Assembly (NCBI RefSeq): GCF_006345805.1
Contig: NC_043023.1
Span: forward strand, 3,286,001 to 3,350,000
Direction: 5' to 3'
DNA from: Octopus sinensis
Taxonomy: Eukaryota
Length of the DNA stretch: 64,000 bases
Position numbers and translations under genes: made by a program. The notes under the pieces were generated by a model. That model did not search any database. It was not told where the DNA came from and was given only the letters and a program-made list of their open reading frames with translations. Shown in pieces: positions 1,605-50,870 of the stretch (position 1 is the first letter of the stretch; every line of letters starts with the position of its first letter).

Positions 1605-1765
1605 CTAACAGGGCTGCTGAACAGAATAATTTCCCTTCTTGAAATATTTGTAGCCGAAGAAAGGGAGTCCGAGAAGGATTGCAGCAAGGATGAATGAGCA
1701 AAAAATGATTCCGACAATCTCAAGTGCACTGAAGGTTCTTGATCCATCAGCTTCAGTTTTCGGAT
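1605..1765 (-). CDS. Terminal TM plus cytoplasmic-tail exon of the unnamed Ig-like type I membrane protein
   Basis: Acceptor ttcatcaattgcag|, phase 1. Encodes (D)PKTEADGSRTFSALEIVGIIFCSFILAAILLGLPFFGYKYFKKGNYSVQQPC*: a hydrophobic helix followed by basic residues. Phase matches the Ig-like exon donors. Confidence 0.72.
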
Positions 1766-7075: not shown

Positions 7076-7324
7076 CTTTTATCTTCAAATGAATGTCAGC
7101 AGCATTTTGGTTGTCATCATCAAATTCCCAAGTCAAACAATTCTTAGTTACGTCTTTGATAAAAAGAGTCGAAGTATTTTCAACATGTGCCACTTTATAG
7201 TAAGGGCCATCAGCGCATGTCCTGTCACATTCATATTTATAATTGTTGCACTTCCAAAACACCGGTCGTTTCATATTTGGTAATGTTATCGTCATTGTGA
7301 CGTTTCCATTGTTCACAGCAATTC
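7076..7324 (-). CDS. Ig-like ectodomain exon, copy A (249 nt, phase 1-1)
   Basis: Acceptor ttctttatttcag|, donor AAAG|gtaagg, open for 83 codons: GIAVNNGNVTMTITLPNMKRPVFWKCNNYKYECDRTCADGPYYKVAHVENTSTLFIKDVTKNCLTWEFDDDNQNAADIHLKIK. Ig fold is inferred from the strand pattern (PVxW; TLxIxDV). Confidence 0.8.
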
Positions 7325-9560: not shown

Positions 9561-10878
9561 TGGCCAGCTCTGGCCTCTCCCATCTAACCTACAATGTCAT
9601 TCCAAAAATTCATCATCGTATCATTGAAATCTCAAAGCTACGAGATATTCCATGATCAATTCAAACCAATGTGAATAAATAAGGATTACATTTCACTGAA
9701 TTATCTGAATGCTAAAGGGTCAATATTTTTGCTCTTGGAAATTAAAAGGGAAAATGTGCAATAGAGACCATCAAAAGAAATTAGACATCTTATTACACTT
9801 AGACTAACGAGTTTTAATTTAATGAGATTTATGTTTATTGGGACATGATTTCATCAGACATGGGTGTACGCCTGATTAAACCATGTCACTTTCCACTTAC
9901 ACCCACCCCACTTATTTTAACCTCTCAGCACCTGGTATAAAGCCACCACACTCACTGCTATGCTCTTCGGTCGGGGCTTTTTCCTTCCGCTTCCTTTGTC
10001 TTTAAAGTTACTTGGCGACCTACTAGTGTTGGTGGCAAGTAAAAATGCCTCCAACTACTCTGTAAAATGGTTGGCATTGAAAAGGAGGAATGAATTCTGC
10101 ATGAAACATCATCATCATCGTTTAACATCCATTTTCCATGCTAGCATGGGTTGGACGGTTCGACCGGGATCTGGGAAGCCAGGAGGCTGCACCAAGCTCC
10201 AGTATGATCTGGCAGAGTTTCTACAGCTGGATGCCCTTCCTAAACGCCAACCACTCCGTGAGTGTATTGGATGCTTTTTATGTGCCAGGGGAGGCTGGTA
10301 ACGGCCACGATCGGTTGGTGGTTTTTACGTGCCACCGACATGGACCCCAGTCAAGGCGGGGCTGGCATCAGCCACGTACAGATGGTGCTTTTTACTTGCC
10401 ACCGGCACAGGTGCCATGACTGATGATGACAAACATCATAACCACAATCCGATTCAGAACGACTGTAATAATCGCAGCTACATGGTAACCAAATGAGTGG
10501 TGGTGCAATGAAGAAAAGCAGCCACTACATGTGGTAAAGTGGTGGGTGTTAGGACGGCCATGAAGCAATAGAAGCCTTGCCAATGCATGGAATGGAGTTC
10601 ACCACAATGCTGTGGTGTGTTGGATTCATAGCAAAATTGAAGGTGTCAGTCCTATATGGACCCCCACAAACCATCATGACCCTGGTCGAAAACCACTGTT
10701 GCAGTACATTCCCTGATGTGCATTTTTGGCTCTTTAGCCTTTCTCAATGGTCAAATTAAAAATTTAAAGAAATCAAAAATCAAAAGATTGGCTAAAAGTT
10801 ATGAGTTAAGGGAAAGAAATAGAAGACAGAATTGAAAAGGTAATGTCTTGGAGAGAAAGGGTTTGTTAATCCACTTAC

Positions 10879-10917
10879 CAATTTCGGTGATTTCCTTAGG
10901 ATACGTATTTGTCAAAC
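10879..10917 (-). CDS. 39-nt mini-exon 1, (C)LTNTYPKEITEI(G)
   Basis: Acceptor tttgtttccattttttacag|, donor G|gtaagt, phase 1-1. Joins the leader exon to Ig exon A in frame and avoids the TGA a direct junction would create. Confidence 0.78.
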
Positions 10918-12240
10918 CTGTAAAAAATGGAAACAAAAATGTTTGATTTTAAGATGATATAATTCAAAATAAGGTGAATAAAAGAACATTATATTTCACA
11001 GTAATCTGATTGCTAAAGGATTAAACCAGCCATATCTGTTTTATGTTTGAACTAGCCACATCCACCCTCTCACACCTACCCTACAATGTCAGTCTAAAAA
11101 TAAACAATCACATCAAAATGTCAAAACTACAAGATAATGAATGATTATTTCAAAAACCAGGAGGGAGGAAGTAGGTAGCTTAATGTGGGTGTGTTGACCC
11201 AAGGAGGGGTAAGAAGAGATAGCCAGATGAGGATGATGGAGGTGGGGTGATCAAGGTATTGAAAGAAGCAGAAGTGGAAAATTGGGAGATGAGCGGGAGG
11301 AGTGAGAGGAAAAGTATTTTCAAGGGTGGTCATTGTTGGGTATGACAATAGATGTTAATAGTTAGGGATGGTGGCACTATAGAACTAAGGGAAATTGGAA
11401 AGGTGGAAGATGGGAGAGGCGAGTATTAAAGGGAGAGAAAGGGTCCACTTACAGATGCTAGTAGTGTAACAAAGGGGAAATCTGAAAAATGAAGATGGGT
11501 TGGTGGCACATCAAAGTACAGAGGTATGTAGACATGTATGAGTAAATAGAGGGAGTTGGTAGCAACAGTAGGAGTAGGTAGTACTAAGTGGTTTGGTTCT
11601 ATTTGAAGAAGAAGATCAGATAAGAATTCAAAGTGTGAGGACGGGGTGGTTGTAAAGATGTATGTGCTGGGTAGCAGGAATGTGCAAAGGTAATCTTTAA
11701 AAATATTTAGAATGGGGGAGGTGGTAATAGTGGAAGTGATATGTTGTTAGTACAACAAAGTTGTAACTTAAGGTTAATCATAAAGAATTACATAGATTTG
11801 ACATAATAGGCAAACAAGGAATAGGTTCTGTGTTTACATGAGAGGATTACATCTGAAAATTTATTAAATAATTAGGGCTTGTGGTTTTGAAAGATAGTGG
11901 ATGATTCTCATACACAGTGCCAAGATTAGTGTTGTATGGGGTGGGCGGGTAGAATATAGGGAATGTTTTGGGACCTGAGGTTCTGTATATAATTTGTTAA
12001 TGAGGTAGATAATTTATAAGTTTAATTGTGGCGGAAAATCAAAAAATTTCCAAAATTTTCTTCCATAGAATGCATCATTTCTAAAGCTCTGCTAAAAACG
12101 AAATTGGAAAAATCCCAGTCCAAACAAAGAAAATCCACCTTATGTGAGTGACCTATTCTAGAACTCTGGGCACTCGAGTAAGTTTGCCTTAACAAAAATA
12201 ACTTGTGGAAAAAATAAAATAAAATAAAAATAAAACTTAC

Positions 12241-12313
12241 AGAAAAATGTTGCAAGCAAATAGCAGAACAAGGTCCAAACAGCCTTGATCTGGTGGGTGA
12301 GAGAGGTGAGCAT
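12241..12313 (-). CDS. Signal-peptide exon, (MLTSLTHQ)IKAVWTLFCYLLATFF
   Basis: Donor T|gtaagt, phase 1, with a hydrophobic h-region. The part above about 12291 comes from the duplicated intron, so the ATG at 12313 is junction-derived and uncertain. Confidence 0.6.
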
Positions 12314-12595
12314 TACCTGAGTGAATGGGCCTTCTCTTAGTGTATACCTGTATATTGAAGAGAAAAGACTGGGGAGGGCATCCACCCTGGTGGTCAGGGA
12401 GACCATGGATTTTGTGGGATTTCTTTATGTGTGGCGCTTGAAAGTCCCCCCATTCTCAGGGGTTTTACTTTGACTTTGTTTCATTCATTGTATGACATTT
12501 TACATGCTAAAACCCACACTGGACCCTCCCGAATGTTTTCCTTTGTGTTCGCCCTCTGAGGTTAATAAAGAAATTATTATAAATCATTTCCTTAC

Positions 12596-12844
12596 TGTTT
12601 ATCTTCAAATGATTGTCTGCAGCATTTTGGTTGTCTTCATCAAATTTCCAAGTCAAACATTTCTTAGTTACATCTTTGATCCAAAGCGTGGGAGTACCTC
12701 CACTATTTGCCACTTTATAGTCAGGGCCATCAGCGCATATCCTGTCACATTCATATTTATAATTGTGGAACCACCAAACCACCGGTTGTCTAATGTTTGG
12801 TATTTTTATCCTAAGGATGAAATTTCGATTGCGCACAGCAATTC
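12596..12844 (-). CDS. Ig-like ectodomain exon, copy B (249 nt, phase 1-1)
   Basis: Same splice sites as copy A. GIAVRNRNFILRIKIPNIRQPVVWWFHNYKYECDRICADGPDYKVANSGGTPTLWIKDVTKKCLTWKFDEDNQNAADNHLKIN. No stops or indels. Confidence 0.8.
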
Positions 12845-14562
12845 CTGAAATAAAGAAATCAGTTAAGAAGTTTTCTCTACAATTATATGGTTCTGGGTTC
12901 AGTCCCACTGCACAGCACCTTGGGAAAGTGTCTTCTACTACAGCCTCAGCCTTGTGAGTGGATTTGGTAGATGGAAACTGAAAGAAGCCTGTCGTGTATA
13001 TGTATATACATATAGGTAAATATAAATATATACACACATATATATATATGTGTGTGTGTGTGGTGTTTGTGTGTGTGTTTGTGTGTCTGTGTTTGTTCCC
13101 CCAACATAGCTTGACAACCGATGCTGGTGTGTTCATGCCCCCGTAACTTAGCGGTTTGGCAAAAGGGTCTGATAGAATAAGTACTAGGCTTACAAAGAAT
13201 AAGTCCTGGGGTTCATTTGCTCGACTAAAGGTGGTGCTCCAGCATGGCCGCAGTCAAATGAGTAAAACAAGTAAAAGAGTAAAGAGTAAAGGGTATATAT
13301 ATAAATAGAAAATTTCAAAGCTATGAGATATTCCATGATCAATTCAAACCAATGTGGATAAATAAGGATTACATTTCACTGAATTATCTGAATGCTAAAG
13401 GGTTAATGTTTTTGCCCTTGGAAATTAAAAGGGAAAATGTGCAATAGAGACCATCAAAAGAAATTAGACATCTTATTACACTTAGACTAACGAGTTTTAA
13501 TTTAATGAGATTTATGTTTATTGGGACATGATTTCATCAGACATGGGTGTACGCCTGATTAAACCATGTCACTTTCCACTTACACCCACCCCACTTATTT
13601 TAACCTCTCAGCACCTGGTATAAAGCCACCACACTCACTGCTATGCTCTTCGGTTGGGGCTTATTCCTTCCGCTTCCTTTTTCTTTATAGTTACTTGGCG
13701 ACCTACTAGTGTTGGTGGCGAGTAAAAATGCCTCCAAGTACTCTGTAAAATGGTTGGCATTAAAAAGTAGGAATGAATTCTGCATGAAACGTCATCATCA
13801 TCGTTTAACATCCGTTTTCCATGCTAGCATGGATTGGACGGTTCGACCGGGATCTGGGAAGCCAGGAGGCTGCACCAGGATCCAGTGTGATCTGGCAGAG
13901 TTTCTACAGCTGGATGCCCTTCCTAAACGCCAACCACTACGTGAGTGTAGTGGTTACTTTTTATGTGCCAGGGGAGGCTGGCAACGACCATGATCGGTTG
14001 GTGGTTTTTACGTGCCACCGACATGGACCCCAGTCAAGGCGGCACTGGCATCGGCCACGTACAGATGGTGCTTCTTACGTGCCACTGGCACAGGTGCCAT
14101 GACTGATGATGACAAACATCACAACCACAGTCCTATTCAGAACGACTGTCATAATCACTGCTACATGGTAACCAAATGAGTGGTGGTGCAATGAAGAAAA
14201 GCAGCCACTACATGTGGTAAAGTGGTGGGTGCTAGGAGGGCCATGAAGCAATAGAAGCCTTGCCAATGCATGGAATGGAGTTCACCACAATGCTGTGGTG
14301 TGTTGGATTCATAGCAAAATTGAAGGTGTCAGTCCTATATAGGACCCCCACAAACCATCATGACCCTGGTCGAAAACCACTGTTGCAGTACATTCCCTGA
14401 TGTGCATTTTTGGCTCTTTAGCCTTTCTCAATGGTCAAATTAAAAATTTAAAGAAATCAAAAATCAAAAGATTGGCTAAAAGTTATGAGTTAAGGGAAAG
14501 AAATAGAAGACAGAATTGAAAAGGTAATGTCTTGGAGAGAAAAGGTTTGTTAATCCACTTAC

Positions 14563-14601
14563 CAATTTCGGTGATTTCCTTAGGATACGTATTTGTCAAA
14601 C
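14563..14601 (-). CDS. 39-nt mini-exon 2, (C)LTNTYPKEITEI
   Basis: Identical to mini-exon 1, intact AG/GT. Confidence 0.65.
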
Positions 14602-16763
14602 CTGTAAAAAATGAAAACAAAAACGTTTGATTTTAAGATGATATAATTCAAAATAATGTGAATAAAAGAACATTATATTTCACAGTAATCTGATTGCTAA
14701 AGGATTAAACCTGCCATATTAAACCAGCCATATCTGTTTTATGTTTGAAGTAGCCACATCCACCCTCTCACACCTACCCTACAATGTCAGTCTAAAAATA
14801 AACAATCACATCATCAAAATGTCAAAACTACAAGATAATGAATGATTAATTCAAAAACCAGGAGGGAGGAAGTAGGTAGCTTAATGTGGGTGTGTTGACA
14901 CAAGGAGGGGTAAGAAGAGATAGGCAGATGAGGAAGATGGAGGTGAGGTGATCAGGGGATTGAAAGAAGTAGAAGTGGAAAATTGGGAGATGAGTGGGAG
15001 GTGTGAGAGGAAAAGTATTTTCAAGGGTGGTCATTGTTGGGTATGACAATAGATGTTAATAGTTAGGGATGGTGGCACTATAGAACTAAGGGAAATTGGA
15101 AAGGTGGAAGATGGGAGAGGCGAGTATTAAAGGGAGAGAAAGGGTCCACTTACAGATGCTGGTAGTGTAGTAAGGGGAAATCTGAAAGATGAAGATGGGT
15201 CGGCGGCACATCAAAGTACAGAGGTATGTAGACATGTATGAGTAAATAGAGGGAGTTGGTAACAAAAGTAGGAGTAGGTAGTACTAAGTGGTTTGGTTCT
15301 ACTTGAAGAAGAAGATCAGATAAGAATTCAAAGTGTGAGGACGGGGTTGTAAAGATGTATGTGCTGGGTAGCAGGAATGTGCAAAGGTAATCTTAAAAAA
15401 TATTTAGAATGGGGGAGGTGGTAATAGTGGAAGTGATATGTTGTTAGTACAACAAAGTTGTAACTTAAGGTTAATCATAAAGAATTACATAGATTTAACA
15501 TAATAGGCAAACAAGGATTAGGTTCTGTGTTTACATGAGAGGATTACATCTGAAAATTTATTAAATAATTAGGGGTTGTGGTTTTGAAAGATAGTGGATG
15601 ATTCTCATACACAGTGCCAAGATTAGTATTGTATGGGGTGGGTGGGTGTGAGGGCTCACTGTTAATTAACCAGGGTAGAATATAGGGAATGTTTTGGGAC
15701 CTGAGCTTCTGTATATAATTTGTTAATGATGTAGTTAATTTATAAGTTGGATTGTGGTGGAAAATCAAAAATGTTCCAAAATTTTCTTCCATAAAATGCA
15801 TCATTTCTAAAGCTCAGCTCAAAACAAAATTGGAAAAATCCCTACTGAAACAAAGAAAATCCACCTTACGTGAGTGACCTATTCCAGACCTCTGTGCACT
15901 TGAGTAAGATTGCCTTAACAAAAATATCCTACCCCACTTATTTTAACCTCTCAGCACCTGGTATAAAGCCACCACCCTCACTGCTATGCTCTTCGGTCGG
16001 GGCTTTTTCCTTCCGTGTCCTTTGTCTTTATTGTTACTAGGCGACCTACTAGTGTTGGTGCCTGGCTCCAGTCTGATCTGGCAGAGTTTCTATAGCTGTT
16101 TGCCCTTCCTAAACACCAACCACTCCGTGAGTGTAGTGGGTGCTTTTTATGTGCCACCAGCACAGGTGCCAGGGGAGGTTCGCAACGGCCACGATCGGTT
16201 GGTGGTTTTTACGTGCCACCGACATGGAAGCCAGTCAAGGCGGTGCTGGCATCGGCCACGTACAGATGGTGCTTCTTACATGCCACTGGCACAGGTGCCA
16301 TGACTGATGATGACAAACATCACAACCACAGTCCTATTCAGAACGACTGTCATAATCACTGCTACATGGTAACCAATGAGTGGTGTGTGCAATGAAGAAA
16401 AGCAGCCACTACATGTGGTAAAGTGGTGGGTGCTAGGAGGGCCATGAAGCAATAGCAAAGCCTGCCAATGCATGGAATGGAGTTCACCACAATGCTGTGG
16501 TGTGTTGGATTCATAGCAAAATTGAAGGTGTCAGTCCTATATGGACCCCCACAAACCATCATGACCCTGGTCGAAAACCACTGTTGCAGTACATTCCCTG
16601 ATGTGCATTTTTGGCTCTTTAGCCTTTCTCAGTGGTCAAATTAAAAATTTAAAGAAATCAAAAATCAAAAGATTGGCTAAAAGTTATGAGTTAAGGGAAA
16701 GAAATAGAAGACAGAATTGAAAAGGTAATGTCTTGGAGAGAAAAGGTTTGTTAATCCACTTAC

Positions 16764-16802
16764 CACTTTCGGTGATTTCATCAGTATATGCATTTGTCAA
16801 AC
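16764..16802 (-). CDS. 39-nt mini-exon 3, (C)LTNAYTDEITES
   Basis: Intact splice sites. 6 nt differ from mini-exon 2, all in codons that change amino acid. Confidence 0.6.
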
Positions 16803-18944
16803 CTGTAAAAAATGAAATCAAAAATGTTTGATTTTAAGATGATATAATTCAAAATAATGTGAATAAAAGAACATTATATTTCACAGTAATCTGATTGCTA
16901 AAGGATTAAACCAGCCATATCTGTTTTATGTTTGAAGTAGCCACATCCACCCTCTCACACCTACCCTACAATGTCAGTCTAAAAATAAACAATCACATCA
17001 TCAAAATGTCAAAACTACAAGATAATGAATGATTAATTCAAAAACCAGGAGGCAGGAAGTAGGTAGCTCAATGTGGGTGTGTTGACCCAAGGAGGGGTAA
17101 GAAGAGATAGCCAGATGAGGATGATGGAGGTGGGGTGATCAGGGTATTGAAAGAAGTAGAAGTGGAAAATTGGGAGATGAGTGGGAGGAGTGAGAGGAAA
17201 AGTATTTTCAAGGGTGGTCATTGTTGGGTATGATAATAGATGTTAATAGTTAGGGATGGTGGCACTATAGAACTATGGGAAATTGGAAAGGTGGAAGATG
17301 GGAGAGGCGAGTATTAAGGGAGAGAAAGGGTCCACTTACAGATGCTAGTAGTGTAATAAAGGGGAATCTGAAAGATAGATGAAGATGGGTCGGCGGCACA
17401 TCAAAGTACAGAGGTATGTAGACATGTATGAGTAAATAGAGGGAGTTTGTAGCAAAAGTAGGAGTAGGTGGTACTAAGTGGTTTGGTTCTACTTGAAGAA
17501 GAAGATCAGATAAGAATTCAAAGTGTGAGGACGGGGTGGTTGTAAAGATGTATGTGCTGGGTAGCAGGAATGTGCAAAGGTAATCTTAAGAAATATTTAG
17601 AATGGGGGAGGTGGTAATAGTGGAAGTGATATGTCGTTAGTGCAACTAAGTTGTAACTTAAGGTTAATCATAAAGAATTACATAGATTTGACATAATAGG
17701 CAAACAAGGATTAGGTTCTGTGTTTACATGAGAGGATTACATCTGAAAATTTATTAAATAATTAGGGGTTGTGGTTTTGAAAGATAGTGGATGATTCTCA
17801 TACACAGTGCCAAGATTAGTGTTGAAAGGGGTGGGTGGTGTGAGGGCTCACTGTTAATTACCAGGGTAGATATGAATGGGAAGTGGGAATGGCGACAAAG
17901 GTATTATAAGGGGATGAGTTAAAATGTGGTGAAAATATGTTAAGGTAGTTAAAAATTGGATTGTGGTGGAAAATCAAAAATGTTCCAAAATTTTCTTCCA
18001 TAAAATGCATCATTCTAAGCTGCTAAAAACAAAATGGAAAAATCCCTACTGAAACAAAGAAAATCCACCTTACGTGAGTGACCTATTCCAGACCTCTGTG
18101 CACTTGAGTAAGATTGCCTTAACAAAAATATCCTACCCCACTTATTTTAACTCTCAGCACCTGGTATAAAGCCACCACCCTCACTGCTATGCTCTTCGGT
18201 CGGGGCATTTTCCTTCCGCTTCCTTTGTCTTTATTGTTTAGGCGACCTACTAGTGTTGGTGCCTGGCTCTAGTCTGATCTGGCAGAGTTTCTATAGCTGT
18301 TTGCCTTCCTAAACACCAACCACTCCGTGAGTGTAGTGGATGCTTTTTATGTGCCAGGGGAGGCTCGCAACGGCCACGATCGGTTGGTGGTTTTTACGTG
18401 CCACCGACATGGAAGCCAGTCAAGGCGGGGCTGGCATCGGCCACGTACAGATGGTGCTTTTTACATGCCACCAGCACAGGTGCCATGACTGATGATGACA
18501 AACATCATAACCACAATCCTATTAAGAACGACTGTAATAATCGCAGCTGCATGGTAACCAAATGAGTGGTGGTGCAATGAAGAAAAGCAGCCACTACATG
18601 TGGTAAAGTGGTGGGTGCTAGGAGGGCCATGAAGCAATAGAAGGCTTGCCAATGCATGGAATGGAGTTCACTACAATGCTGTGGCTTGTTGGATCCATAG
18701 CAAAATTGAAGGTGTCAGTCCTATATGGACCCCCACAAACCATCATGACCCTGGTCGAAAACCACTGTTGCAGTACATTCCCTGATGTGCATTTTTGGCT
18801 CTTTAGCCTTTCTCAATGGTCAAATTAGAAATTTAAAGAAATCAAAAATCAAAAGATTGGCTAAAAGTTATGAGTTAAGGAAAGAAATACAGACAGAATT
18901 GAAAAGGTAATGTCTTGGAGAGAAAAGGTTGTTAATCCACTTAC

Positions 18945-18983
18945 CACTTTCGGTGATTTCATCAGTATATGTATTTGTCAAAC
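18945..18983 (-). CDS. 39-nt mini-exon 4, (C)LTNTYTDEITES
   Basis: Intact splice sites, open frame. Confidence 0.55.
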
Positions 18984-21128
18984 CTGTAAAAATGAAATCA
19001 AAAATGTTTGATTTTAAGATGATATAATTCAAAATAATGTGAATAAAAGAATATTATATTTCACAGTAATCTGATTGCTAAAGGATTAAACCAGCCATAT
19101 CTGTTTTATGTTTGAACTAGCCACATCCACCCTCTCACACCTACCCTACAATGTCAGTCCAAAAATAAACAAGTCTAAAAATAAACAATCACATCATCAA
19201 AATGTCAAAACTACAAGATAATGAATGATTAATTCAAAAACCAGGAGGGAGGAAGTAGGTAGCTCAATGTGGGTGTGTTGACCCAAGGAGGGGTAAGAAG
19301 AGATAGCCAGATGAGGATGATGGAGGTGTGGTGATCAAGGTATTGAAAGAAGCAGAAGTGGAAAATTGGGAGATGAGTGGGAGGAGTGAGAGGAAAAGTA
19401 TTTTCAAGGGTGGTCATTGTTGGGTATGATAATAGATGTTAATAGTTAGGGATGGTGGCACTATAGAACTAAGGGAAATTGGAAAGGTGGAAGATGGGAG
19501 AGGCGAGTATTAAAGGGAGAGAAAGGGTCCACTTACAGATGCTAGTAGTGTAATAAAGGGGAAATCTGAAAGATGAAGATGGGTCGGCGGCACATCAAAG
19601 TACAGAGGTATGTAGACATGTATGAGTAAATAGAGGGAGTTTGTAGCAAAAGTAGGAGTAGGTGGTACTAAGTGGTTTGGTTCTACTTGAAGAAGAAGAT
19701 CAGATAAGAATTCAAAGTGTGAGGACGGGGTGGTTGTAAAGATGTATGTGCTGGGTAGCAGGAATGTGCAAAGGTAATCTTAAGAAATATTTAGAATGGG
19801 GGAGGTGGTAATAGTGGAAGTGATATGTCGTTAGTGCAACTAAGTTGTAACTTAAGGTTAATCATAAAGAATTACATAGATTTGACATAATAGGCAAACA
19901 AGGATTAGGTTCTGTGTTTACATGAGAGGATTACATCTGAAAATTTATTAAATAATTAGGGGTTGTGGTTTTGAAAGATAGTGGATGATTCTCATACACA
20001 GTGCCAAGATTAGTGTTGAAAGGGGTGGGTGGGTGTGAGGGCTCACTGTTAATTAACCAGGGTAGAATATAGGGAATGTTTTGGGACCTGAGGTTTTGTA
20101 TATAATTTGTTAATGAGGTAGTTAATTTATAAGTTGGATTGTGGTGGAAAATCAAAAATGTTCCAAAATTTTCTTCCATAAAATGCATCATTTCTAAAGC
20201 TCAGCTCAAAACAAAATTGGAAAAATCCCTACTGAAACAAAGAAAATCCACCTTACGTGAGTGACCTATTCCAGACCTCTGTGCACTTGAGTAAGATTGC
20301 CTTAACAAAAATATCCTACCCCACTTATTTTAACCTCTCAGCACCTGGTATAAAGCCACCACCTTCACTGCTATGCTCTTCGGTCGGGGCTTTTTCCTTC
20401 CGCTTCCTTTGTCTTTATTGTTACTAGGCGACCTACTAGTGTTGGTGCCTGGCTCTAGTCTGATCTGGCAGAGTTTCTATAGCTGTTTGCCCTTCCTAAA
20501 CACCAACCACTCCGTGAGTGTAGTGGATGCTTTTTATGTGCCAGGGGAGGCTCGCAACGGCCACGATCGGTTGGTGGTTTTTACGTGCCACCGACATGGA
20601 AGCCAGTCAAGGCGGGGCTGGCATCGGCCACGTACAGATGGTGCTTTTTACATGCCACCAGCACAAGTGCCATAAGTGATGATGACAAACATCATAACCA
20701 CAATCCTATTAAGAACGACTGTAATAATCGCAGCTACATGGTAACCAAATGAGTGGTGGTGCAATGAAGAAAAGCAGCCACTACATGTGGTAAAGCGGTG
20801 GGTGCTAGGAGGGCCATGAGCAATAGAAGGCTTGCCAATGCATGGAATGGAGTTCACTACAATGCTGTGGCTTGTTGGATCCATAGCAGAATTGAAGGTG
20901 TCAGTCCTATATGACCCCACAAACCATCATGACCCTGGTCGAAAACCCTGTTGCAGTACATTCCCTGATGTGCATTTTTGGCTCTTTAGCCTTTCTCAAA
21001 GGTTAAATAAAAATTTAAAGAAATCAAAGTCAAAAGATTGGCTAAAAGTTATGAGTTAAGGGAAAGAAATAGAAGACAGAATTGAAAAGGTAATGTCTTG
21101 GAGAGAAAAGGTTTGTTAATCCACTTAC

Positions 21129-21167
21129 CAATTTCGGTGATTTCCTTAGGATACGTATTTGTGAAAA
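21129..21167 (-). CDS. 39-nt mini-exon 5, (F)FTNTYPKEITEI
   Basis: Acceptor ttttcattctttacag|, donor G|gtaagt, open frame. Confidence 0.6.
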
Positions 21168-21419
21168 CTGTAAAGAATGAAAACAAAAACGTTTGATTTT
21201 AAGATGATATAATTCAAAATAATGTGAATAAAAGAACATTATATTTCACAGTAATCTGATTGCTAAAGGATTAAGCCAGCCATATCTGTTTTATGTTTGA
21301 ACTAGCCACATCCACCCTCTCACACCTACCCTACAATGTCAGTCCAAAAATAAACAAGTCTAAAAATAAACAATCACATCATCAAAATGTCAAAACTACA
21401 AGATAATGAATGATTAATT

Positions 21420-21519
21420 NNNNNNNNNNNNNNNNNNNNNNNNNNNNNNNNNNNNNNNNNNNNNNNNNNNNNNNNNNNNNNNNNNNNNNNNNNNNNNNNN
21501 NNNNNNNNNNNNNNNNNNN
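21420..21519. other. Assembly gap (100 N, true size unknown)
   Basis: Run of N. Confidence 1.
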
Positions 21520-23845
21520 ATGGATGATGGGCACTTGCTTTTAATGTTGGTGAAAAGAAAGAGGCTGGAGAAGCCATTATGAAAGACTGCTGAATGAGGA
21601 GAATGAATGGGAGGAGGAGAACCTGCCAAATGTTGACCAAGTAGAGGGACCAGCTATCCAAATAGACAGCCCCCTTGTAGTTAAGGCAATTAAGGATATG
21701 AAAACAGGTAAAGCCCCTGGCCCATCAGGAATCACTGCTGGGATGCTTAAAACAGCTGGCTATGTGGGCTATGGCCTAGTCACCCGCATTGTAAACCAGG
21801 TAGTTCACAATGGAGTCATACCCAATGACTGGCGTAGCAGCACCATAGTCAACTGCTACAAGGGTAAGGGTGATGCTCTAGATAGAAATAACTACAGGGG
21901 TATTAAACTGTTGGATCAGGTGATGAAGGTCACAGAGAGGGTCATAACCCATCTCATTAGGGAGAGAATTTGCTTAGATGAGATGCAGTTCGGTTTTGTG
22001 CCGGGTAGAAGCACCACTGATGCTATATTCCTGGTCCGACAACTGCAGGAGAAGTACCTAGCTAAAGATAAACCCCTCTACATAGCTTTTGTGGACTTGG
22101 AGAAAGCCTTTGACAGGGTTCCCCGATCCCTTATCTGGTGGTCGATGCGGAAACTGGAAATTGACGAATGGCTAATAAGGGCTGTACAGGCTCTATACAG
22201 AGAGGCTGTCAGCAAGGTTAGGATTGGCAACGAATATAGTGAAGAATTCCGGGTAGAAGTAGGTGTACACCAAGGCTCAGCCCTCAGTCCCCTTTTATTC
22301 ATCATAGTCCTCCAGGCAATAACAGAGGAATTCAAAACAGGATGCCCCTGGGAGCTCCTCTATGCCGATGACCTGGCTCTCATAGCAGAATCACTACCGG
22401 AACTAGAAGAGAAATTCGGGTGTGGAAGCAAGGGTTGGAATCAAAGGGCCTTAGAATAAATGTAGCAAAGACCAAAGTATTAGTAAGCAGCAAGCGTACT
22501 CAGCACACATCCCCTCGGGTAGGTGGCCCTGCTCAACCTGTAGGAAAGGTACAGGTAGAAACTCCATAAGATGCACCCAATGTAAGTTATGGACACATAA
22601 GAGGTGCAGCAACATTAAAGGGAAATTAACAGATAAGATAGCTTTCATGTGCGGCAGATGCACGGGACAATAGACACAAACAGACACTCAGAAAACAGAT
22701 TCATCACACTCCAGGGAGAAGAAACTAGAAGTAGTTGATAGTTTCCGCTACCTGGGAGACCAAGTTAGTAGCGGAGGTGGATGCACAGAGAGTATCACCA
22801 CTAGAATACGAATAGCCTGGGCAAAGTTCAGAAAGCTCCTACCCCTACTGGCAACAAAGGGTCTCTCGCTCAGAGTGAAAGGTAGATTGTATGATGCATG
22901 TGTGTGAACTGCCATGCTTCACGGTAGTGAAACATGGGCTGTGACTGCAGAGGACATGCGTAGACTTGAAAGAAATGAAGCTAGCATGATCCGCTGGATG
23001 TGTAATGTCAGTGTGCACGCACAACAGAGTGTAAGCACCCTGAGAGAAATGCTGGACATAAGAAGCATCAGATGTGGTGTGCAAGAGCGACGCTTGCGAT
23101 GGTATGGTCATGTACTGCGGATGGATGAGGAGAGATGTGTGAAGAAGTGCCACTCCCAAACAGTTGAAGGAATCAGGGGGAGAGGTAGACCCAGGAAGAC
23201 ATGGGATGAGGTAGTCAAGCATGACCTCAGAGCGTTGGGCCTCACTGAGGCAATGGCGAAGGACCGAGATCTCTGGAGATATGCTGTGACTGTAAAGACC
23301 CGGGCTGCTTCCTGCACCAGTTCCGCATAGACCCCTGCCCATTCAAAGTACCCTGGATCCCGGAACGTCTCGCTGTGCTTGAGGAAACCTGTTGAGTCAA
23401 GTACATGAACATGAACATCGAAATAAATATCAATGGAAATAGTAGTTGTGATACCTGTGCCGGTGGCACATAAAAAGCACCATCCGTACGTGGCCGTTGC
23501 CAGCGCCGCCTCGACTGGCTTCTGTGCCGGTGGCACATAAAAAGCACCAACCGAACATGGCCGTTGCCAGCGCCGCCTTAGTTGGCTTCTGTGCCGGTGG
23601 CACGTTAAAAGCACCAACCGATCATGGCCGATGCCGGACCCCCCTGGCACCTGTGCAGGTGGCACGTAAAAAGCACCCACTACACTCGCGGAGTGGTTGG
23701 CGTTAGGAAGAGCATCCAGCTGTAGAAACACTGCCAGATAAGACTGGAGCCTGGTGCAGCCCCTGGCTTCCCAGACCCCGGTCGAACCGTCCAACCCATG
23801 CTAGCGCGGAAAACGGACGTTAAACAATGATGATGAAGATGATGT
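21520..23845 (+). mobile_element. RTE-clade LINE, degenerate (RT, PHD-like insert, C-terminus, 3' UTR, (GAT)n tail)
   Basis: ORF 21698-22459 has KAPGPSG, NYRGIKLL, QFGF, FVDLEKAFD, GVHQGSALSPLLF and YADD. Frameshifts near 22417 and 22495, TGA near 22906. C-terminal RRLRWYGHV...GRGRPRKTW. Confidence 0.95.
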
Positions 23846-30529: not shown

Positions 30530-31570
30530 TTAGAGTTGTGATCCCCGTGCCAATGGCACATAAAAGGCACCATCCGAACATGGCTAATGTCAGCACCACC
30601 TGGACTAGCTTCCATGCTGGTGGCACATAAAAAGTACCAACCAATTGTGGTTGTTGCCAGCCGCCTCTAGCCCCTTTGCTGGTGGCACGTAAAAGGCACC
30701 AACCGATCTTGGTCGTTGCCAGCTGCCTCTGGCCCCTGTGCCGGTGGCACATAAAAAGCACCAACCGATTGTGGTCGTTGCCAGCCGCCTCTAGCCCCTT
30801 TGCTGGTGGCACGTAAAAGGCACCAACCGATTGTGGTCGTTGCCAGCTGCCTCTAGCCCCTTTGCTGGTGGCACGTAAAAGGCACCAACCGATTGTGGTC
30901 GTTGCCAGCCGCCTCTGGCCCCTTTGCTGGTGGGACATAAAAGGCAACAACCGATCTTGGTCGTTGCCAGCTACCTCTGGCCCCTGTGCCGGTGGCACGT
31001 AAAAAGCACCAACCGATTGTGGTCGTTGCCAGCCGCCTCTGGCACGTAAAAGCACTTGCTCAAGGATGATGGGTTGCCAGGTATTGAACTTGTGACCTTA
31101 TGGCTTTAAGCAAAATACCCTAACCACTAAGCTACATGCTTTCACTTTCGACTTACATTCGAAATCGGTCAAAAATCAATGGAAATTGTAGTTGTGATAC
31201 CAGTGCCAGTAGCTGGTGGCATGTAAAACACACCAAATGATAGTGGCTGTTGCCAGCCTCCCCTGGCACCTGTGCCGGTGGCATGTAAAAAGCACCAATC
31301 CGATTGTGGCCGTTGCCAGCCTCCCCTGGCACGTAAAAAGCACCAACCGATCGTGGGCGTTGCCAGACTCCCCTGGCACCTGTGCCGGTGTCATGTAAAA
31401 AGCACCCACTACACTCACGGAGTGGTTGGCGTTAGGAAGAGGCATCCAGCTGTAGAAACATTGCCAGATCAGACTGGAGCCTGGTGCAGCCTCCTGGCTT
31501 CCCAGACCCCGGTTGAACCGTCCAACCCATGCTAGCATGGAAAACGGACATTAAACGATGATGATGATGA
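30530..31570 (-). repeat. RTE 3' UTR-like elements with internally amplified about 60-bp subrepeats
   Basis: ggtggcacgtaaaaggcaccaaccgattgtggtcgttgccagc repeated about 7 times, then a copy of the RTE tail. Confidence 0.75.
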
Positions 31571-36300: not shown

Positions 36301-36386
36301 CTGTCCAGTGTCCGGTAAGCAACATCGAGTTGGTTGTCCTTGACAAGGACGGTCCTTGCTATAAACCTCATGTGGTTGGCAGACAT
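36301..36386 (-). CDS. MRPS21: Mitochondrial ribosomal protein S21, coding exon 1
   Basis: MSANHMRFIARTVLVKDNQLDVAYRTLDR, donor AG|gtatgt, phase 2. 86+178 = 264 nt, giving 87 aa. Confidence 0.95.
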
Positions 36387-45284: not shown

Positions 45285-46245
45285 ATGGGCCGTGACTACT
45301 GAGGATATGCGTAAGCTCGCAAGAAATGAAGCCAGTATGCTCTGATGGATGTGTAATGTCAGTGTTCATAATCGACAGAGTGTAAGTACCTTGAGAGAAA
45401 AGTTGGACCTAAGAAGCATCAGTTGTGGTGTGCAAGAGAGATATTTGCACTGGTATGGTCATGTGGCGAGAATGGATGAAGATAGTTGTGTGAAAAAGTG
45501 CCACACCCTAGCAGTTGAGGGAACCTGTGGAAGAGGTAGACCTAGGAAGACCTGGGATGAAGTGGTGAAGCACGACCTTCGAACTTTAGGTCTCACTGAG
45601 GAAATGACTAGAGACCGAGACCTTTGGAAGTATGCTGTGTGTGGGAAGACCCGGTAGGTCAAGTGAGACCATAACCCGTGGCCTCTACCTGGGACGTAGC
45701 CAGCCCACTTATGTGTTTCCTTCTTGGGACACAAAACTCCACTTGTGAAGACCTGTTGAGGCAAGTGAAAATCAAAATCGTAATCGATCAACATCAATGG
45801 AATTTGTAACTGAGATACCAGTGCCGGTGGCACGTAAGAGAACCATCCGAACGTGGCTGTAGCCAGTGCCGCCCTGACTGGCTTCCGTGCCGGTGGGACT
45901 TAAAAAGCACCATCCGACAATTGCCGTTGCCAGCTTCGTCTGGTTTCCGTGCTGGTAGCACGTACAAAGCACCATCCGATCGTGGGCGTTTGCCAGCCTC
46001 GTCTGGCCACTGTGCTGGTGGCACGTACAAAGCACCATCCGATTGTGGCCGTTGCCAGCCTCGTCTGGCACATAAAAAGCGCCCACTACACTCATGGAGC
46101 GGTTGGCATTAGGAAGGGCATCCAGCCGTAGAAACACTGCCAGATCAGATTGGAGTCTGGTGCAGCCTCCTGGCTTCCCAGACCCGGGTCGAATTGTCCA
46201 ACCAATGCAAGCATGGAAAACGGATGCTAAACGATGATGATGATG
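45285..46245 (+). mobile_element. 5'-truncated RTE LINE with 3' UTR
   Basis: WAVTTEDMRKL...WYGHVARM...GRGRPRKTW, then the repeated UTR and (GAT)n tail. Confidence 0.85.
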
Positions 46246-48525: not shown

Positions 48526-50013
48526 AAACATATACATCATCATCATCAATGTTTCTACTGCCGGACACCCTTCCTAATGCCAACCACCCACTACACTCTC
48601 GGAGTGGTTGGCGTATAGGAAGGGCATCCAGCTGTAGAAACTCTGCCAGATCAGATTGGAGCCTGGTGCAGCCATCTGGTTCACCAGTCCTCAGTCAAAA
48701 TCGTCCAACCCATGTCAGCATGGTAAGCAGACATTAAACGATGATGATGGTCCTTGTGGCAATTTAAGGAATTGCCCAGGGAGTGTATCAGTTTATTAAC
48801 CATATAGTAAGCTACAAAATTCTTACGTTCTCTTGATTTCCTGTAATTCATGGTTCCATCAGACAAAATCTAAAAGACAAGGGAGGATGAGCTTGATTCA
48901 GTTTCCCCTTTACCAAATCTGCTTACAAGGCTTTTGTTGGTCCATGATTATAGTAGAAGACACTTACCCAAGGTGCCACGCAGTGGGACTGAACCCAGAA
49001 CCTTCGTGTTTGAGAAGCACATGTCTTACCACACAGCCACATCTGCACCTGTGTGCACACACACACAGACACACACACACATCAGCTTTCAAGTTTCCAT
49101 CTGACAAAGCTATAGAGGATGACACTTGCCCAAGGTGTCATGCAGTGGGATTGAACCCAGAACCTTCGTGTTTGAGAAGCACATGTCTTACCACACAGCC
49201 ACATCTGCACCTGTGTGCACACACACACAGACACACACACACATCAGCTTTCAAGTTTCCATCTGACAAAGCTATAGAGGATGACACTTGCCCAAGGTGT
49301 CATGCAGTGGGATTGAACCCAGAACCTTCGTGTTTGAGAACCACACTTCTTACCACACAGCCACATCAGCTTCTTTGAAGTTTCCATCTGTCAATTCTAC
49401 TGATAAAGCTTTGGTTGATTCAGAGCTACAGAAGATGACCCTTGCCCTTGATGTTGTGCAGTGGGACTGAACCAGAAACTATATATTTGGGAAGCAAGCT
49501 TCTTAACCACACATCCCTACCACCAGCACCTGTGTTATATCAAATTTCATACCTGAAAGGTGGTGAGCTGGCAGAATCGTTAGCACGCCAGGCAAAATGC
49601 GTAGCCGTATTTTGTCTGCCGTTACGTTCTGAGTTCAAATTCCGCCGAGGTTGACTTTGCCTTTCATCGTTTCAAGGTCGATAAATTAAGTACCAGTTAT
49701 GCACTGGGGTCGATGTAATTGACTTAATCCGTTTGTCTGTCCTTGTTTGTCCCCTCTGTATTTAAGCCCCTTGTAGGTAGTAAAAGAAATAGGTATTTCG
49801 TCTGCCGTTACGTTCTGGGTTCAAATTCCGTCGAGGTCGACTTTGCTTTTCATCCTTTCGGGGTCGATAAATTAAGTACCAGTTACGCACTGGGGTCGAT
49901 GTAATTGACTTAATCCGTTTGTCTGTCCTTGTTTGTCCCCTCTATGTTTAGCCCCTTGTGGGTAGTAAAGAAATATATATCAAATTTCATCCCTTTTTTT
50001 TCTCTTTTTGCAG

Positions 50014-50301
50014 GCCCCAGCACCACCGCAGCCAGTACCAGTGCCCCTGCAGTCGCTTCCAATCCGGGGTCATTCAGCTTTAACCCTTCTAGTGTGTCAG
50101 CAGCACAGCCAACCTTTGGGGCCACGCCAAGTAGTAGCTTCAGTTTCTCATTAGCGACAGGGGCACCAACGGCCCCTACAACTACCCCTGCAGCTGCCAC
50201 CGGTTTGGCTACCCCAATCCCCGCTGCCCTCCCTGTTATTACCACAGCTGATCCTGGGGCCGCTTTCAGTTTTACGCCCCAAGCCACCAGCACCACCACA
50301 G
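50014..50301 (+). CDS. NUP62: Nucleoporin p62, coding exon 3 (FG, Thr/Ala-rich)
   Basis: PSTTAASTSAPAVASNPGSFSFNP...PTFGATPSSSFSFS...; phase 1-1. Confidence 0.9.
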
Positions 50302-50870
50302 GTAAGATGTCTTTGTTTCTCTCTGTCCTTTTACTGGTTTCTGTGATTTGGATTATGGCCATGCTGGAGCAGTCCCCTGAAGGGTTTTAGTCAAACAAAA
50401 TCAACCCCAGTTTTTTATCTTTCATCTTTTACTTGCTTCAGTCATTAAACTATGGCCAGGCTCGGGCACTGCCTTGTGCTCTTTCACTTGTTTCAGTCAT
50501 TTGACTGTGGCCATGCTGGAGCACCGCCTTTAGTCAAGCAAATCCACCCCAGGACTATAGAGTATAGAACTATAGAACAAGCATATCTCAACAATGGGCT
50601 TCTTTCAGTTTCCGTCTACCAAATTCACTCACATGCTTAGAGATATTCCAAAAATTATTACTCTTTTACTTGTTCCAGTCATTTGACTTTGGCCATGCTG
50701 GAGCACTGCTTTTAGTCGAGCAGATCAACCCCCAGGACTTATTCTTCATAAGCCTAGTACTTACTATACCGGTCTCTTTTGCCGAACAGCTAAGTTAGAG
50801 GGACGTAAACACACCAGCATCAGTTGTCAAGCGATGTTGAGGGGACAAACACAGACACACAGACATATAC

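What the first reader, a model, noticed from the sequence alone, without database searches (positions are those of the whole stretch)
10879..21167. Cassette of five frame-symmetric 39-nt mini-exons with variant sequences: possible combinatorial splicing
Each tandem unit carries one mini-exon with intact strong splice sites: PKEITEI (1, 2), AYTDEITES (3), TYTDEITES (4) and FFTNTYPKEITEI (5). Units 2 and 3 differ at 6 of 39 exon nt, all in amino-acid-changing codons, but at only about 2 of 150 adjacent intron nt. All mini-exons and both ectodomain exons are phase 1-1, so any subset keeps the frame. Possible products include one- or two-domain isoforms with different mature N-termini, a miniature Dscam-like arrangement. 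Analogy only; no isoform is observed here.
Basis: partly seen in the sequence, partly recalled or inferred. Interest (0 to 1): 0.82.

Follow-up and report, generated by a model that had tools for sequence, protein, structure and literature searches.

The report
Tandem mini-exon copies in octopus Ig gene
An octopus-only gene for a small two-Ig-domain membrane protein carries five in-frame copies of its 39-base "pre-domain" mini-exon, three of them left over from a deletion followed by unequal crossing-over; whether the spare copies are spliced in, skipped or mixed is still unknown.

Summary
Five 39-nt, phase 1-1 mini-exons with cag|…|gtaagt sites lie on the minus strand at the stated coordinates. 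They belong to an Octopus-restricted family of type I membrane proteins built from the module leader, 39-nt mini-exon, 249-nt Ig-like exon and TM exon. The window is Octopus sinensis. The independently assembled, gap-free O. vulgaris locus has the same array with four copies, so the array is not made of collapsed alleles. All short 2.2-kb units share one 1,382-bp deletion junction that removed an Ig exon and the next leader. The extra O. sinensis copy is a chimera typical of unequal crossing-over. Two exon types have been swapped between units by short-tract conversion since the species split. Orthologous exons differ at 6/39 nt, against under 2% in their flanks.

Splicing is untested here. 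The one O. vulgaris model joins the first mini-exon directly to Ig exon A and skips two copies. Predicted paralog mRNAs include consecutive mini-exons, skip domain exons and use alternative leaders. I found nothing that would enforce Dscam-like exclusivity. My verdict is a real and evolutionarily dynamic tandem exon duplication, and a plausible but unproven source of N-terminal variants. Interest is moderate to low.

The parts
21129..21167 (-). mini-exon 5, first in transcription: (V)FTNTYPKEITEI. It is the partner of the leader exon and the ortholog of O. vulgaris V1.
   Evidence: 0/39 exon differences from V1 and 0.7% in the flanks.
18945..18983 (-). mini-exon 4: LTNTYTDEITES. This is the extra copy in O. 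sinensis. Its exon and about 150 nt downstream resemble unit 3; the rest of the unit resembles unit 5/V1.
16764..16802 (-). mini-exon 3: LTNAYTDEITES. An orphan copy, ortholog of O. vulgaris V2.
   Evidence: 1/39 exon differences, 2.4% in the flanks.
14563..14601 (-). mini-exon 2: LTNTYPKEITEI. The native partner of Ig exon A and ortholog of V3, although the exon differs from V3 at 6/39.
12596..12844 (-). Ig-like exon A, 249 nt, phase 1-1. It lacks the family's first conserved Cys (WWF instead of WKC).
12241..12289 (-). Decayed internal leader exon, (AAG)AVWTLFCYLLATFF followed by gtaagt. The ATG is intact in O. vulgaris (L001 35552-35600).
10879..10917 (-). mini-exon 1, identical to mini-exon 2. 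The native partner of Ig exon B and ortholog of V4; the exon differs from V4 at 6/39 while 0/236 differ upstream.
7076..7324 (-). Ig-like exon B, 249 nt, phase 1-1.
   Evidence: It matches the first 73 residues of O. sinensis XP protein P0004 exactly (sequence against the translation).
1605..1765 (-). Terminal exon: stalk, transmembrane helix, short cytoplasmic tail and stop codon.
   Evidence: helix 256-294 in the ortholog model.
14602..21167 (-). Three head-to-tail short units of 2201, 2181 and 2184 bp. Each is a mini-exon plus intron and lacks the 1,382-bp segment that holds an Ig exon and a leader. The identical deletion junction lies at 15930/15931, 18134/18135 and 20317/20318.
12205..13586 (-). 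Segment present only in the long unit (Ig exon A plus the decayed leader) and absent from every short unit.
21420..21519 (.). 100-N assembly gap. In O. vulgaris the matching 4.2 kb (L001 23325-27533) holds a 5' exon and the true leader exon, MMDLFKLVLLLLMTCA.
36302..36325 (-). First, probably untranslated, exon of the gene. It matches the start of the O. vulgaris model exactly (MLLTGHWT).

Best explanation
**What it is.** The five segments are genuine, splice-competent copies of the standard 39-nt mini-exon of an Octopus-specific Ig-superfamily gene family. The family's ancestral module is: leader exon, about 1.3-kb intron, 39-nt mini-exon, intron, 249-nt Ig exon, TM exon. The mini-exon encodes the end of the signal peptide or the interdomain linker, plus the first beta-strand of the Ig-like domain that follows.

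**Role of each copy.**
- mini2 and mini1 are the native partners of Ig exons A and B.
- mini5 is the partner of the leader. Its own Ig exon, together with the next leader, was removed by a single 1,382-bp deletion.
- The resulting 2.2-kb deletion-bearing unit was then copied by unequal crossing-over. O. vulgaris has two such units and O. sinensis three. mini4 is the chimeric crossover product.

**Sequence exchange.** Two exon sequence types exist: P (TYPKEITEI) and D (AYTDEITES). Short-tract gene conversion moves them between units, and this has happened since the two species split about 2.5 Mya.

**Splicing (inferred, not shown).** The spare copies keep the same flanks as the used ones, so the spliceosome should see them. 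I think the most likely outcome is variable, largely unregulated skipping or inclusion. That would give N-terminal extensions of 0-3 extra 13-residue peptides ahead of Ig domain A. The form seen in O. vulgaris (first mini-exon joined to Ig exon A) would be a major product. I do not expect a Dscam-like regulated one-of-N choice.
For: **Family and module.**
- All 29 database relatives are Octopus proteins.
- The canonical module is seen in O. bimaculoides L003, with the same acceptor context, and in O. sinensis L002.
- Fold: there are two beta-sandwich domains, and the C-terminal half of the mini-exon peptide forms the first strand. The top Foldseek hits are titin, NCAM2 and Dpr Ig tandems. Pfam I-set is sub-threshold for this protein and above threshold in member P0009.

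**The array is real.**
- The gap-free O. vulgaris locus has four copies in the same order and spacing.

**Origin.**
- One identical deletion junction is present in all five short units of both species.
- The intron just 3' of the true leader is homologous to the intron 3' of the internal leader.
- The body of unit 4 is about 1% from both unit 5 and V1, while its exon and about 150 nt downstream resemble unit 3/V2.

**Gene conversion.**
- The orthologous pairs S2/V3 and S1/V4 each differ at 6/39 in the exon, against 1.8-1.9% in the flanks (p about 1e-4).
- The upstream markers at -23 and -16 travel with the exon type in S2/V3.

**Splicing inference.**
- The O. vulgaris model is leader-V1-IgA-V4-IgB-TM.
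- That annotation used RNA-seq and Iso-Seq through PASA/EVM (PMC10700109).
- Paralog models contain consecutive mini-exons (P0016; isoform X8) or no mini-exon between domains (P0006).
Against: - No RNA data for this gene could be examined, so every statement about inclusion or skipping is inference.
- The O. vulgaris model is a single consensus model, and it may itself be partly ab initio.
- The paralog model with two consecutive mini-exons argues that all copies could be included constitutively.
- The exon is a local island of mostly non-synonymous change (8 of 9 variable sites). Both domain-adjacent exons switched type together in one lineage. Both facts could reflect selection on the peptide, which would mean the copies matter.
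- Copy number 5 rests on one long-read assembly. Units 4 and 5 carry an excess of private 1-bp deletions.
Confidence: 0.6

Rival explanations
1. One reading: the array is a functional alternative-splicing cassette, combinatorial or one-of-N. It would diversify the mature N-terminus and first strand of an Ig-like surface receptor, as a small-scale analogue of Dscam or of schistosome micro-exon genes.
For: - All exons are symmetric and in frame, with intact sites.
- The sister-species model skips two copies.
- The family's predicted isoforms mix modules.
- Exon differences are clustered and 8 of 9 are non-synonymous.
- The copies skipped in O. vulgaris (V2, V3), and their O. sinensis counterparts, carry -16A and a 9-bp complement between the polypyrimidine tract and the exon. 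The used copies lack this.
Against: - There is no mechanism for exclusivity: 2.2-kb GT-AG introns, a 39-nt in-frame length, and no docking/selector pairs.
- Local folds are not better than shuffles (z from -0.6 to +1.5).
- No isoform with a middle copy appears among 5.8 billion proteins.
- Copy number differs between species that split 2.5 My ago, and the new copy is a plain crossover chimera.
- The whole gene evolves fast: 6 of 7 Ig-exon differences between the species are non-synonymous. The exon's pattern is therefore not special.
Confidence: 0.15
2. All five mini-exons are constitutive. The mature protein would then carry four tandem 13-residue T/E-rich peptides as an N-terminal stalk before Ig domain A.
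For: - The spare copies keep at least 250 nt upstream and about 1 kb downstream nearly identical to the copies that are used.
- The same mini-exon is included in every family model.
- The paralog LOC115225372 model includes two consecutive mini-exons and an orphan one before its TM exon.
Against: The O. vulgaris ortholog model, from an annotation that used Iso-Seq, omits V2 and V3. No longer isoform is on record.
Confidence: 0.2
3. The array, or its fifth copy, is an assembly artefact caused by collapsed haplotypes or a repeat mis-join next to the gap.
For: - A 100-N gap lies 252 nt upstream of mini5.
- Units 4 and 5 have 9 and 5 private small deletions, against 1-2 elsewhere.
- O. vulgaris has one unit fewer.
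Against: - An independent ONT-based assembly of the sister species, with no gap, shows the same tandem order with four copies.
- The units differ by 1-6% and each has private changes. Unit 4 has a private ~90-bp replaced segment (within 17855-17965) found nowhere else in the window or in L001.
- Units 5, 4 and 3 lie within one contig.
Confidence: 0.05

Closest known systems
Paralogs in the same Octopus family: O. sinensis LOC115225372 (P0016) and LOC115225116 isoforms X1-X8
   Same: They share the same module: leader, 39-nt mini-exon with a conserved acceptor, 249-nt Ig exon and TM exon, all phase 1-1. Their models contain consecutive or orphan mini-exons, domain-exon skipping, alternative leaders and alternative TM exons.
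   Different: Those genes have at most two adjacent mini-exons. Here four precede one Ig exon, in near-identical 2.2-kb units. The paralog isoforms are computed models whose read support I could not see.
Dscam1 variable exon clusters with docking/selector RNA pairing (PMC4691838, PMC6071210; details from general knowledge)
   Same: Both are tandem arrays of homologous exons of equal length and phase that encode part of an Ig domain of a surface receptor. Both arise by tandem exon duplication.
   Different: Dscam exons are strictly mutually exclusive, enforced by competing RNA structures. Here nothing enforces exclusivity: the lengths stay in frame, the introns are long, and I found no docking/selector complement. 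The scale is 4-5 copies rather than 12-48.
Schistosoma micro-exon genes (MEGs; PMC10526429)
   Same: Short symmetric exons follow a signal-peptide exon, so skipping any subset keeps the frame. In both cases the product is a fast-evolving surface or secreted protein.
   Different: MEG coding regions consist almost entirely of micro-exons of 3-81 bp. Here two 249-nt Ig exons carry most of the protein, and the mini-exons are recent duplicates of one another.
Alternatively spliced small exons in vertebrate type I receptors (NCAM MSD1/VASE mini-exons, CD45 exons A/B/C). This is from my own knowledge and was not checked here.
   Same: Small in-frame cassette exons change a Thr/Ser-rich extracellular N-terminal or hinge segment of an Ig-superfamily or receptor protein.
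   Different: Those exons are unrelated to one another in sequence and their regulated use is documented. Here the exons are tandem duplicates and their use is unknown.
Generic tandem exon duplication by unequal crossing-over (general knowledge)
   Same: Units lie head to tail with one shared junction. Copy number differs between sister species, one unit is chimeric, and units exchange sequence by gene conversion.
   Different: Nothing essential differs. This is the category the locus fits best.

Membership tests
Mutually exclusive exon cluster (Dscam1 type) | Tandem array of homologous exons of the same length and phase | tested here: met
   Five 39-nt phase 1-1 exons at about 2.2-kb spacing.
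Mutually exclusive exon cluster (Dscam1 type) | Exactly one exon of the array in each mRNA | tested here: inconclusive
   No RNA data were available. The single O. vulgaris model uses one of the three copies before Ig exon A. Paralog models contain two in a row.
Mutually exclusive exon cluster (Dscam1 type) | A mechanism that enforces exclusivity: competing docking/selector RNA pairing, an intron too short, incompatible splice-site classes, or frameshift/NMD on double inclusion | tested here: not met
   Introns are 2.14-2.16 kb, all GT-AG, and 39 nt keeps the frame. The best inverted repeats are 16-28 nt at 75-85% complementarity. Local folds have z from -0.6 to +1.5 against shuffles. This is a weak test for long-range pairing.
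Mutually exclusive exon cluster (Dscam1 type) | Variants encode alternative versions of one structural element | tested here: inconclusive
   The AlphaFold model puts the C-terminal half of the peptide (EITEI) in the first beta-strand of each domain, but pLDDT there is only 46-59.
Micro-exon gene (schistosome MEG type) | Short symmetric exons (multiples of 3) downstream of a signal-peptide exon | tested here: met
Micro-exon gene (schistosome MEG type) | Most of the coding sequence made of micro-exons | tested here: not met
   Two 249-nt Ig exons and a 161-nt TM exon carry most of the protein.
Micro-exon gene (schistosome MEG type) | Observed transcript variants produced by micro-exon skipping | not testable with these tools
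   Only predicted protein models are available.
Immunoglobulin superfamily domain | Match to a curated Ig profile above its threshold | tested here: inconclusive
   This protein scores 16.4 bits on I-set against a 23.7 cut-off. Family member P0009 scores 35.5 bits.
Immunoglobulin superfamily domain | Beta-sandwich fold resembling solved Ig domains | tested here: met
   Two sandwich domains, with mean pLDDT 70.7 and domain cores at 80-91. The top Foldseek PDB hits are titin Z1Z2/I-band, NCAM2 and Dpr/DIP, at probability 1.00.
Octopus leader / mini-exon / Ig / TM family (LOC115225116 and relatives) | Sequence homology of the ectodomain and TM region | tested here: met
   E-values from 1e-169 to 1e-9 to 29 Octopus proteins. 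The O. vulgaris ortholog is 86% identical over 100% of the query.
Octopus leader / mini-exon / Ig / TM family (LOC115225116 and relatives) | A 39-nt phase 1-1 mini-exon with a conserved acceptor, ahead of a 249-nt phase 1-1 domain exon | tested here: met
   Seen in the window, L001, L002 and O. bimaculoides L003.
Tandem duplication by unequal crossing-over | Head-to-tail units sharing one junction, copy-number difference between close relatives, and a chimeric unit | tested here: met
   The junction is identical in five units of two species. There are 5 copies against 4. Unit 4 is a chimera of unit 3 and unit 5.

The most novel reading that the evidence does not exclude
The whole Octopus-specific cluster could work as a diversification system for surface receptors. 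The cluster consists of leader, mini-exon, Ig and TM modules, all phase 1-1. Its annotated models splice across modules and even across neighbouring genes. The tandem mini-exon array would then be one layer of that system. Copy-number change and exon-limited gene conversion would supply new N-terminal strands. Alternative leaders, mini-exon choice and domain skipping would combine them in individual cells.
Probability: 0.1. Interest if true: 0.7.

Novelty: new member of a known kind. Interest (0 to 1): 0.35.

Why it matters
If the spare mini-exons are used differentially, this would be an example in cephalopods of receptor N-terminal diversification by tandem exon duplication. It would sit in a lineage-restricted Ig family that nobody has characterised. 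Cephalopods are better known for RNA editing than for splicing-based diversity. Even if the copies are not used that way, the locus is a clean, datable case (about 2.5 My) of three linked processes: orphan exons created by deletion of their partner exon, multiplication by unequal crossing-over, and sequence exchange by conversion tracts barely longer than the exon. It also flags an annotation problem. The O. sinensis gene has no proper model because its leader lies in an assembly gap.

Tried and rejected
- **Leader exon in the window.** I searched with tblastn and blastn using the O. vulgaris leader and the region around it. It is absent. Only the intron 3' of the leader matches, at the internal decayed leader.
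- **Docking/selector-type complementarity across 10800-21419.** Only short 75-85% matches turned up. One lies between Ig exon A and the tract upstream of mini3/mini4, and I regard it as chance.
- **Local RNA structure around each acceptor.** The D-type copies fold 3-5 kcal/mol better and pair the polypyrimidine tract with the exon. No fold beats dinucleotide shuffles. I kept this only as a lead.
- **Exon as the most variable 39-nt window of the unit.** Rejected, because 12% of windows are as variable.
- **Paralog loci.** The LOC115225116 locus is not retrievable because the gene range is 380 kb. P0001 and P0019 are not on record. The LOC115225442 range is too long.
- **Literature.** No paper mentions any of the family's LOC or UniProt identifiers.
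- **Plus-strand ORFs inside the units (up to 126 aa).** They lie in a dispersed 62-67-nt periodic repeat that recurs elsewhere in the window, so I did not pursue them as genes.
- **Second database search with concatenated mini-exon peptides.** I judged it unnecessary. Any isoform carrying Ig exon A or B would already have appeared or in the cluster listing.
Full report
**What is in the sequence.**
The finding lies on the minus strand of a eukaryotic gene. Five 39-nt segments sit at 21129-21167, 18945-18983, 16764-16802, 14563-14601 and 10879-10917. Each is preceded by a long pyrimidine tract ending in cag, and each is followed by gtaagtgga.

Read in phase 1 they encode (x)FTNTYPKEITEI, LTNTYTDEITES, LTNAYTDEITES, LTNTYPKEITEI and LTNTYPKEITEI. 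Two 249-nt exons (12596-12844 and 7076-7324) and a terminal exon (1605-1765) complete an open reading frame. That frame encodes two about 83-residue domains, a transmembrane helix and a short tail. All of the mini-exons and both domain exons are phase 1-1.

Units 2 and 3 differ at 6/39 exon positions, against 3/236 upstream and 1/142 downstream (Fisher p=7e-5).

**What the gene is.**
A search of 5.8 billion proteins returned 29 relatives, all from Octopus sinensis, O. vulgaris or O. bimaculoides, and all uncharacterised.
- Exon B is identical to the start of an O. sinensis RefSeq protein (P0004), so the window is O. sinensis.
- O. vulgaris CAI9743493.1 (P0002) is the ortholog, at 86% identity over the full query.
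- Pfam gives only sub-threshold I-set matches for this protein. One family member passes the threshold.
- An AlphaFold model of the ortholog shows two beta-sandwich domains plus a TM helix. Its best PDB matches are tandem Ig domains of titin, NCAM2 and Dpr/DIP.

The family is therefore a lineage-restricted set of small type I Ig-superfamily proteins.

**The family's module.**
The exon module is constant across members: leader exon, 39-nt mini-exon, 249-nt domain exon and TM exon. It appears with the same acceptor context in an O. bimaculoides single-domain member and in an O. sinensis two-domain member.

In the model, the C-terminal half of the mini-exon peptide (EITEI, with the family-invariant Ile) forms the first strand of the following domain. 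Confidence for that strand is low. By comparison with other members (…CLASA|G.Y.I.QS…), the N-terminal half supplies either the signal-peptide cleavage region or the interdomain linker. This last point is inference.

**Is the array real?**
The O. vulgaris locus (L001) comes from an independent ONT-based assembly and has no gap. It holds four mini-exons in the same order and spacing (2188, 2205 and 3681 bp), followed by Ig exon A, one mini-exon, Ig exon B and the TM exon.

Flank divergence identifies the orthologous pairs:

| O. sinensis | O. vulgaris | Flank divergence |
|---|---|---|
| mini5 | V1 | 0.7% |
| mini3 | V2 | 2.4% |
| mini2 | V3 | 1.8% |
| mini1 | V4 | 1.9% |

So the array is neither collapsed alleles nor scattered paralogs.

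The O. sinensis leader is missing only because 4.2 kb present in O. vulgaris falls into the 100-N gap at 21420-21519. That 4.2 kb contains a 5' exon and the leader MMDLFKLVLLLLMTCA. This also explains why RefSeq has no proper model for the gene.

**How the array arose.**
The long unit from mini2 to mini1 is 3,684 bp. It contains Ig exon A and, 300 bp further on, a leader-like exon with a phase-1 gtaagt donor. That exon has an intact ATG in O. vulgaris and AAG in the window. The intron after this internal leader is homologous to the intron after the true leader. The ancestral repeat was therefore a whole leader, mini-exon and Ig module.

Every short unit lacks the same 1,382 bp (window 12205-13586) and has an identical junction. 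There are three short units in O. sinensis and two in O. vulgaris. This points to one deletion that removed an Ig exon and the next leader and left two mini-exons adjacent. The 2.2-kb product was then multiplied.

The extra O. sinensis unit (mini4) is about 1% from both unit 5 and V1 over its body. Its exon and about 150 nt downstream resemble unit 3/V2 instead. That is the structure expected of an unequal crossover between misaligned units.

One caution applies. Units 4 and 5 carry more private 1-bp deletions than the others, so the consensus there is less polished. The count of five deserves confirmation.

**The exon-versus-intron contrast.**
Two exon types exist, P (ACGTATCCTAAG…ATTG) and D (GCATATACTGAT…AGTG). 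The orthologous pairs mini2/V3 and mini1/V4 each differ at 6/39 exon positions while their flanks differ by under 2% (p about 1e-4). For mini1/V4 there is no difference in 236 nt upstream. For mini2/V3 the markers at -23 and -16 switch together with the exon.

This is the signature of short-tract gene conversion, or of sorting of old exon haplotypes, since the species split about 2.5 Mya (date from PMC10700109).

Of the nine variable exon positions among the nine copies, eight are non-synonymous. The exon is more variable than its ±250-nt neighbourhood (9/39 against 31/466, p=0.002). However, 12% of 39-nt windows elsewhere in the unit are equally variable.

The rest of the gene also evolves fast. 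Six of seven Ig-exon differences between the species are non-synonymous, and the TM exon differs by many substitutions and two indels. The pattern is therefore compatible with selection on the peptide but does not require it. Cross-polishing of repeats during assembly is a residual caveat for single-base patterns.

**Splicing.**
Nothing here shows transcripts of this gene. The indirect evidence is mixed.
- The O. vulgaris model joins leader, V1, Ig exon A, V4, Ig exon B and TM, omitting V2 and V3. It comes from an annotation that used RNA-seq and Iso-Seq. Its two upstream non-coding-looking exons suggest a transcript basis. No longer isoform exists in the database.
- Paralog models, in contrast, contain two consecutive mini-exons and an orphan one before the TM exon (LOC115225372).
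- Other paralog models show two consecutive mini-exons after domain skipping (LOC115225116 X8), alternative leaders with different first mini-exons (X1/X2/X3/X5), alternative TM exons (X4), or no mini-exon between two domains (P0006).

Modular, in-frame exon use is therefore a family habit, at least in computed models.

I tested the features that define Dscam-type exclusivity and did not find them.
- The introns are long GT-AG introns, and double inclusion stays in frame.
- No docking/selector-like complement exists.
- Local folds do not beat shuffles.

One weak lead remains. The copies skipped in O. vulgaris, and their O. sinensis counterparts (V2, V3, mini3, mini4), carry -16A and a perfect 9-bp complement between the polypyrimidine tract and the exon (UGAUUUCAU/AUGAAAUCA). 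The used copies lack it.

**Verdict.**
Its structural meaning is settled with good confidence: this is a tandem exon duplication in an Octopus-specific Ig gene, created by deletion, unequal crossing-over and gene conversion.

I rate regulated combinatorial use at about 0.15, constitutive inclusion at about 0.2, and variable, largely unregulated use with the O. vulgaris-like form prominent as the most likely outcome.

The locus is a new member of a known kind and of moderate-to-low interest. It would rise sharply if junction reads showed patterned use.

Noticed in passing
window 21420-21519 (gap), compared with L001 23325-27533: The 100-N gap hides about 4.2 kb that in O. vulgaris holds a 5' exon and the true leader exon. 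The O. sinensis gene therefore has no complete RefSeq model. The RefSeq protein P0004 (LOC115225442) starts at the first in-frame Met inside Ig exon B. It continues into a mini-exon, Ig exon and TM exon more than 100 kb away, bypassing the TM exon at 1605-1765.
   Followed up: partly
window 12241-12289 (-); L001 35552-35600: An internal leader exon lies between Ig exon A and mini-exon 1. It has an intact ATG (MAVWTLFCYLLATFF) with a phase-1 donor in O. vulgaris, and AAG instead of ATG in O. sinensis. It could give a one-domain isoform in one species only.
   Followed up: partly
window 1605-1765 (-): The TM/cytoplasmic exon is far more diverged between O. sinensis and O. vulgaris than the Ig exons or introns. 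It has many substitutions plus 12-nt and 3-nt indels within the membrane-spanning part.
   Followed up: partly
window 12596-12844 (-): In both species Ig exon A lacks the family's first conserved cysteine (WWF/WLF instead of WKC) and the NxT site at the start of the domain. It may be a degenerating or re-purposed domain.
   Followed up: no
window about 17860-17950: Unit 4 carries a private replaced segment of about 90 bp. It has no match elsewhere in the window or in the O. vulgaris locus, and its origin is unknown.
   Followed up: partly
window 16803-21167: Units 4 and 5 have 9 and 5 private small deletions, mostly single bases, against 1-2 in the other short units. This suggests a less well polished consensus in this part of the O. 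sinensis assembly.
   Followed up: partly
window 16811-16819 paired with 16774-16782 (mini3); same offsets for mini4 (18992-19000 with 18955-18963); L001 V2 and V3: D-type copies have -16A and a perfect 9-bp complement between the polypyrimidine tract (UGAUUUCAU) and the exon (AUGAAAUCA). They also have an 8-bp AU hairpin just upstream. P-type copies and V4 have two mismatches in the complement. The copies with the stem are the ones omitted from the O. vulgaris model. The folds are not significant against shuffles.
   Followed up: partly
window 21554-23327 (+): A reverse-transcriptase ORF (Pfam RVT_1, 86 bits) of a retroelement lies directly beside the gap, inside the intron upstream of the array. 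It is shared with O. vulgaris, since that region aligns at 95.9%.
   Followed up: partly
window 49929-50390 (+): An ORF rich in FSF/FG-type repeats. The syntenic O. vulgaris neighbour gene has an Nsp1_C (nucleoporin) domain, so this is probably an exon of a Nup62-like gene.
   Followed up: no
window 23455-23677, 30615-31043, 45878-46069, and inside each unit (e.g. 13850-14100): A dispersed 62-67-nt periodic repeat (…GGTGGCACGTAAAAAGCACC…) recurs through the window and in the intron after every mini-exon. It accounts for the plus-strand ORFs in the units.
   Followed up: no
O. sinensis scaffold CM016885.1 (context listing); P0015: The family's gene cluster is interleaved with repeated histone gene quartets. 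One O. vulgaris model (P0015) even fuses a histone H2B-like N-terminus to a family member, which is probably an annotation chimera.
   Followed up: no
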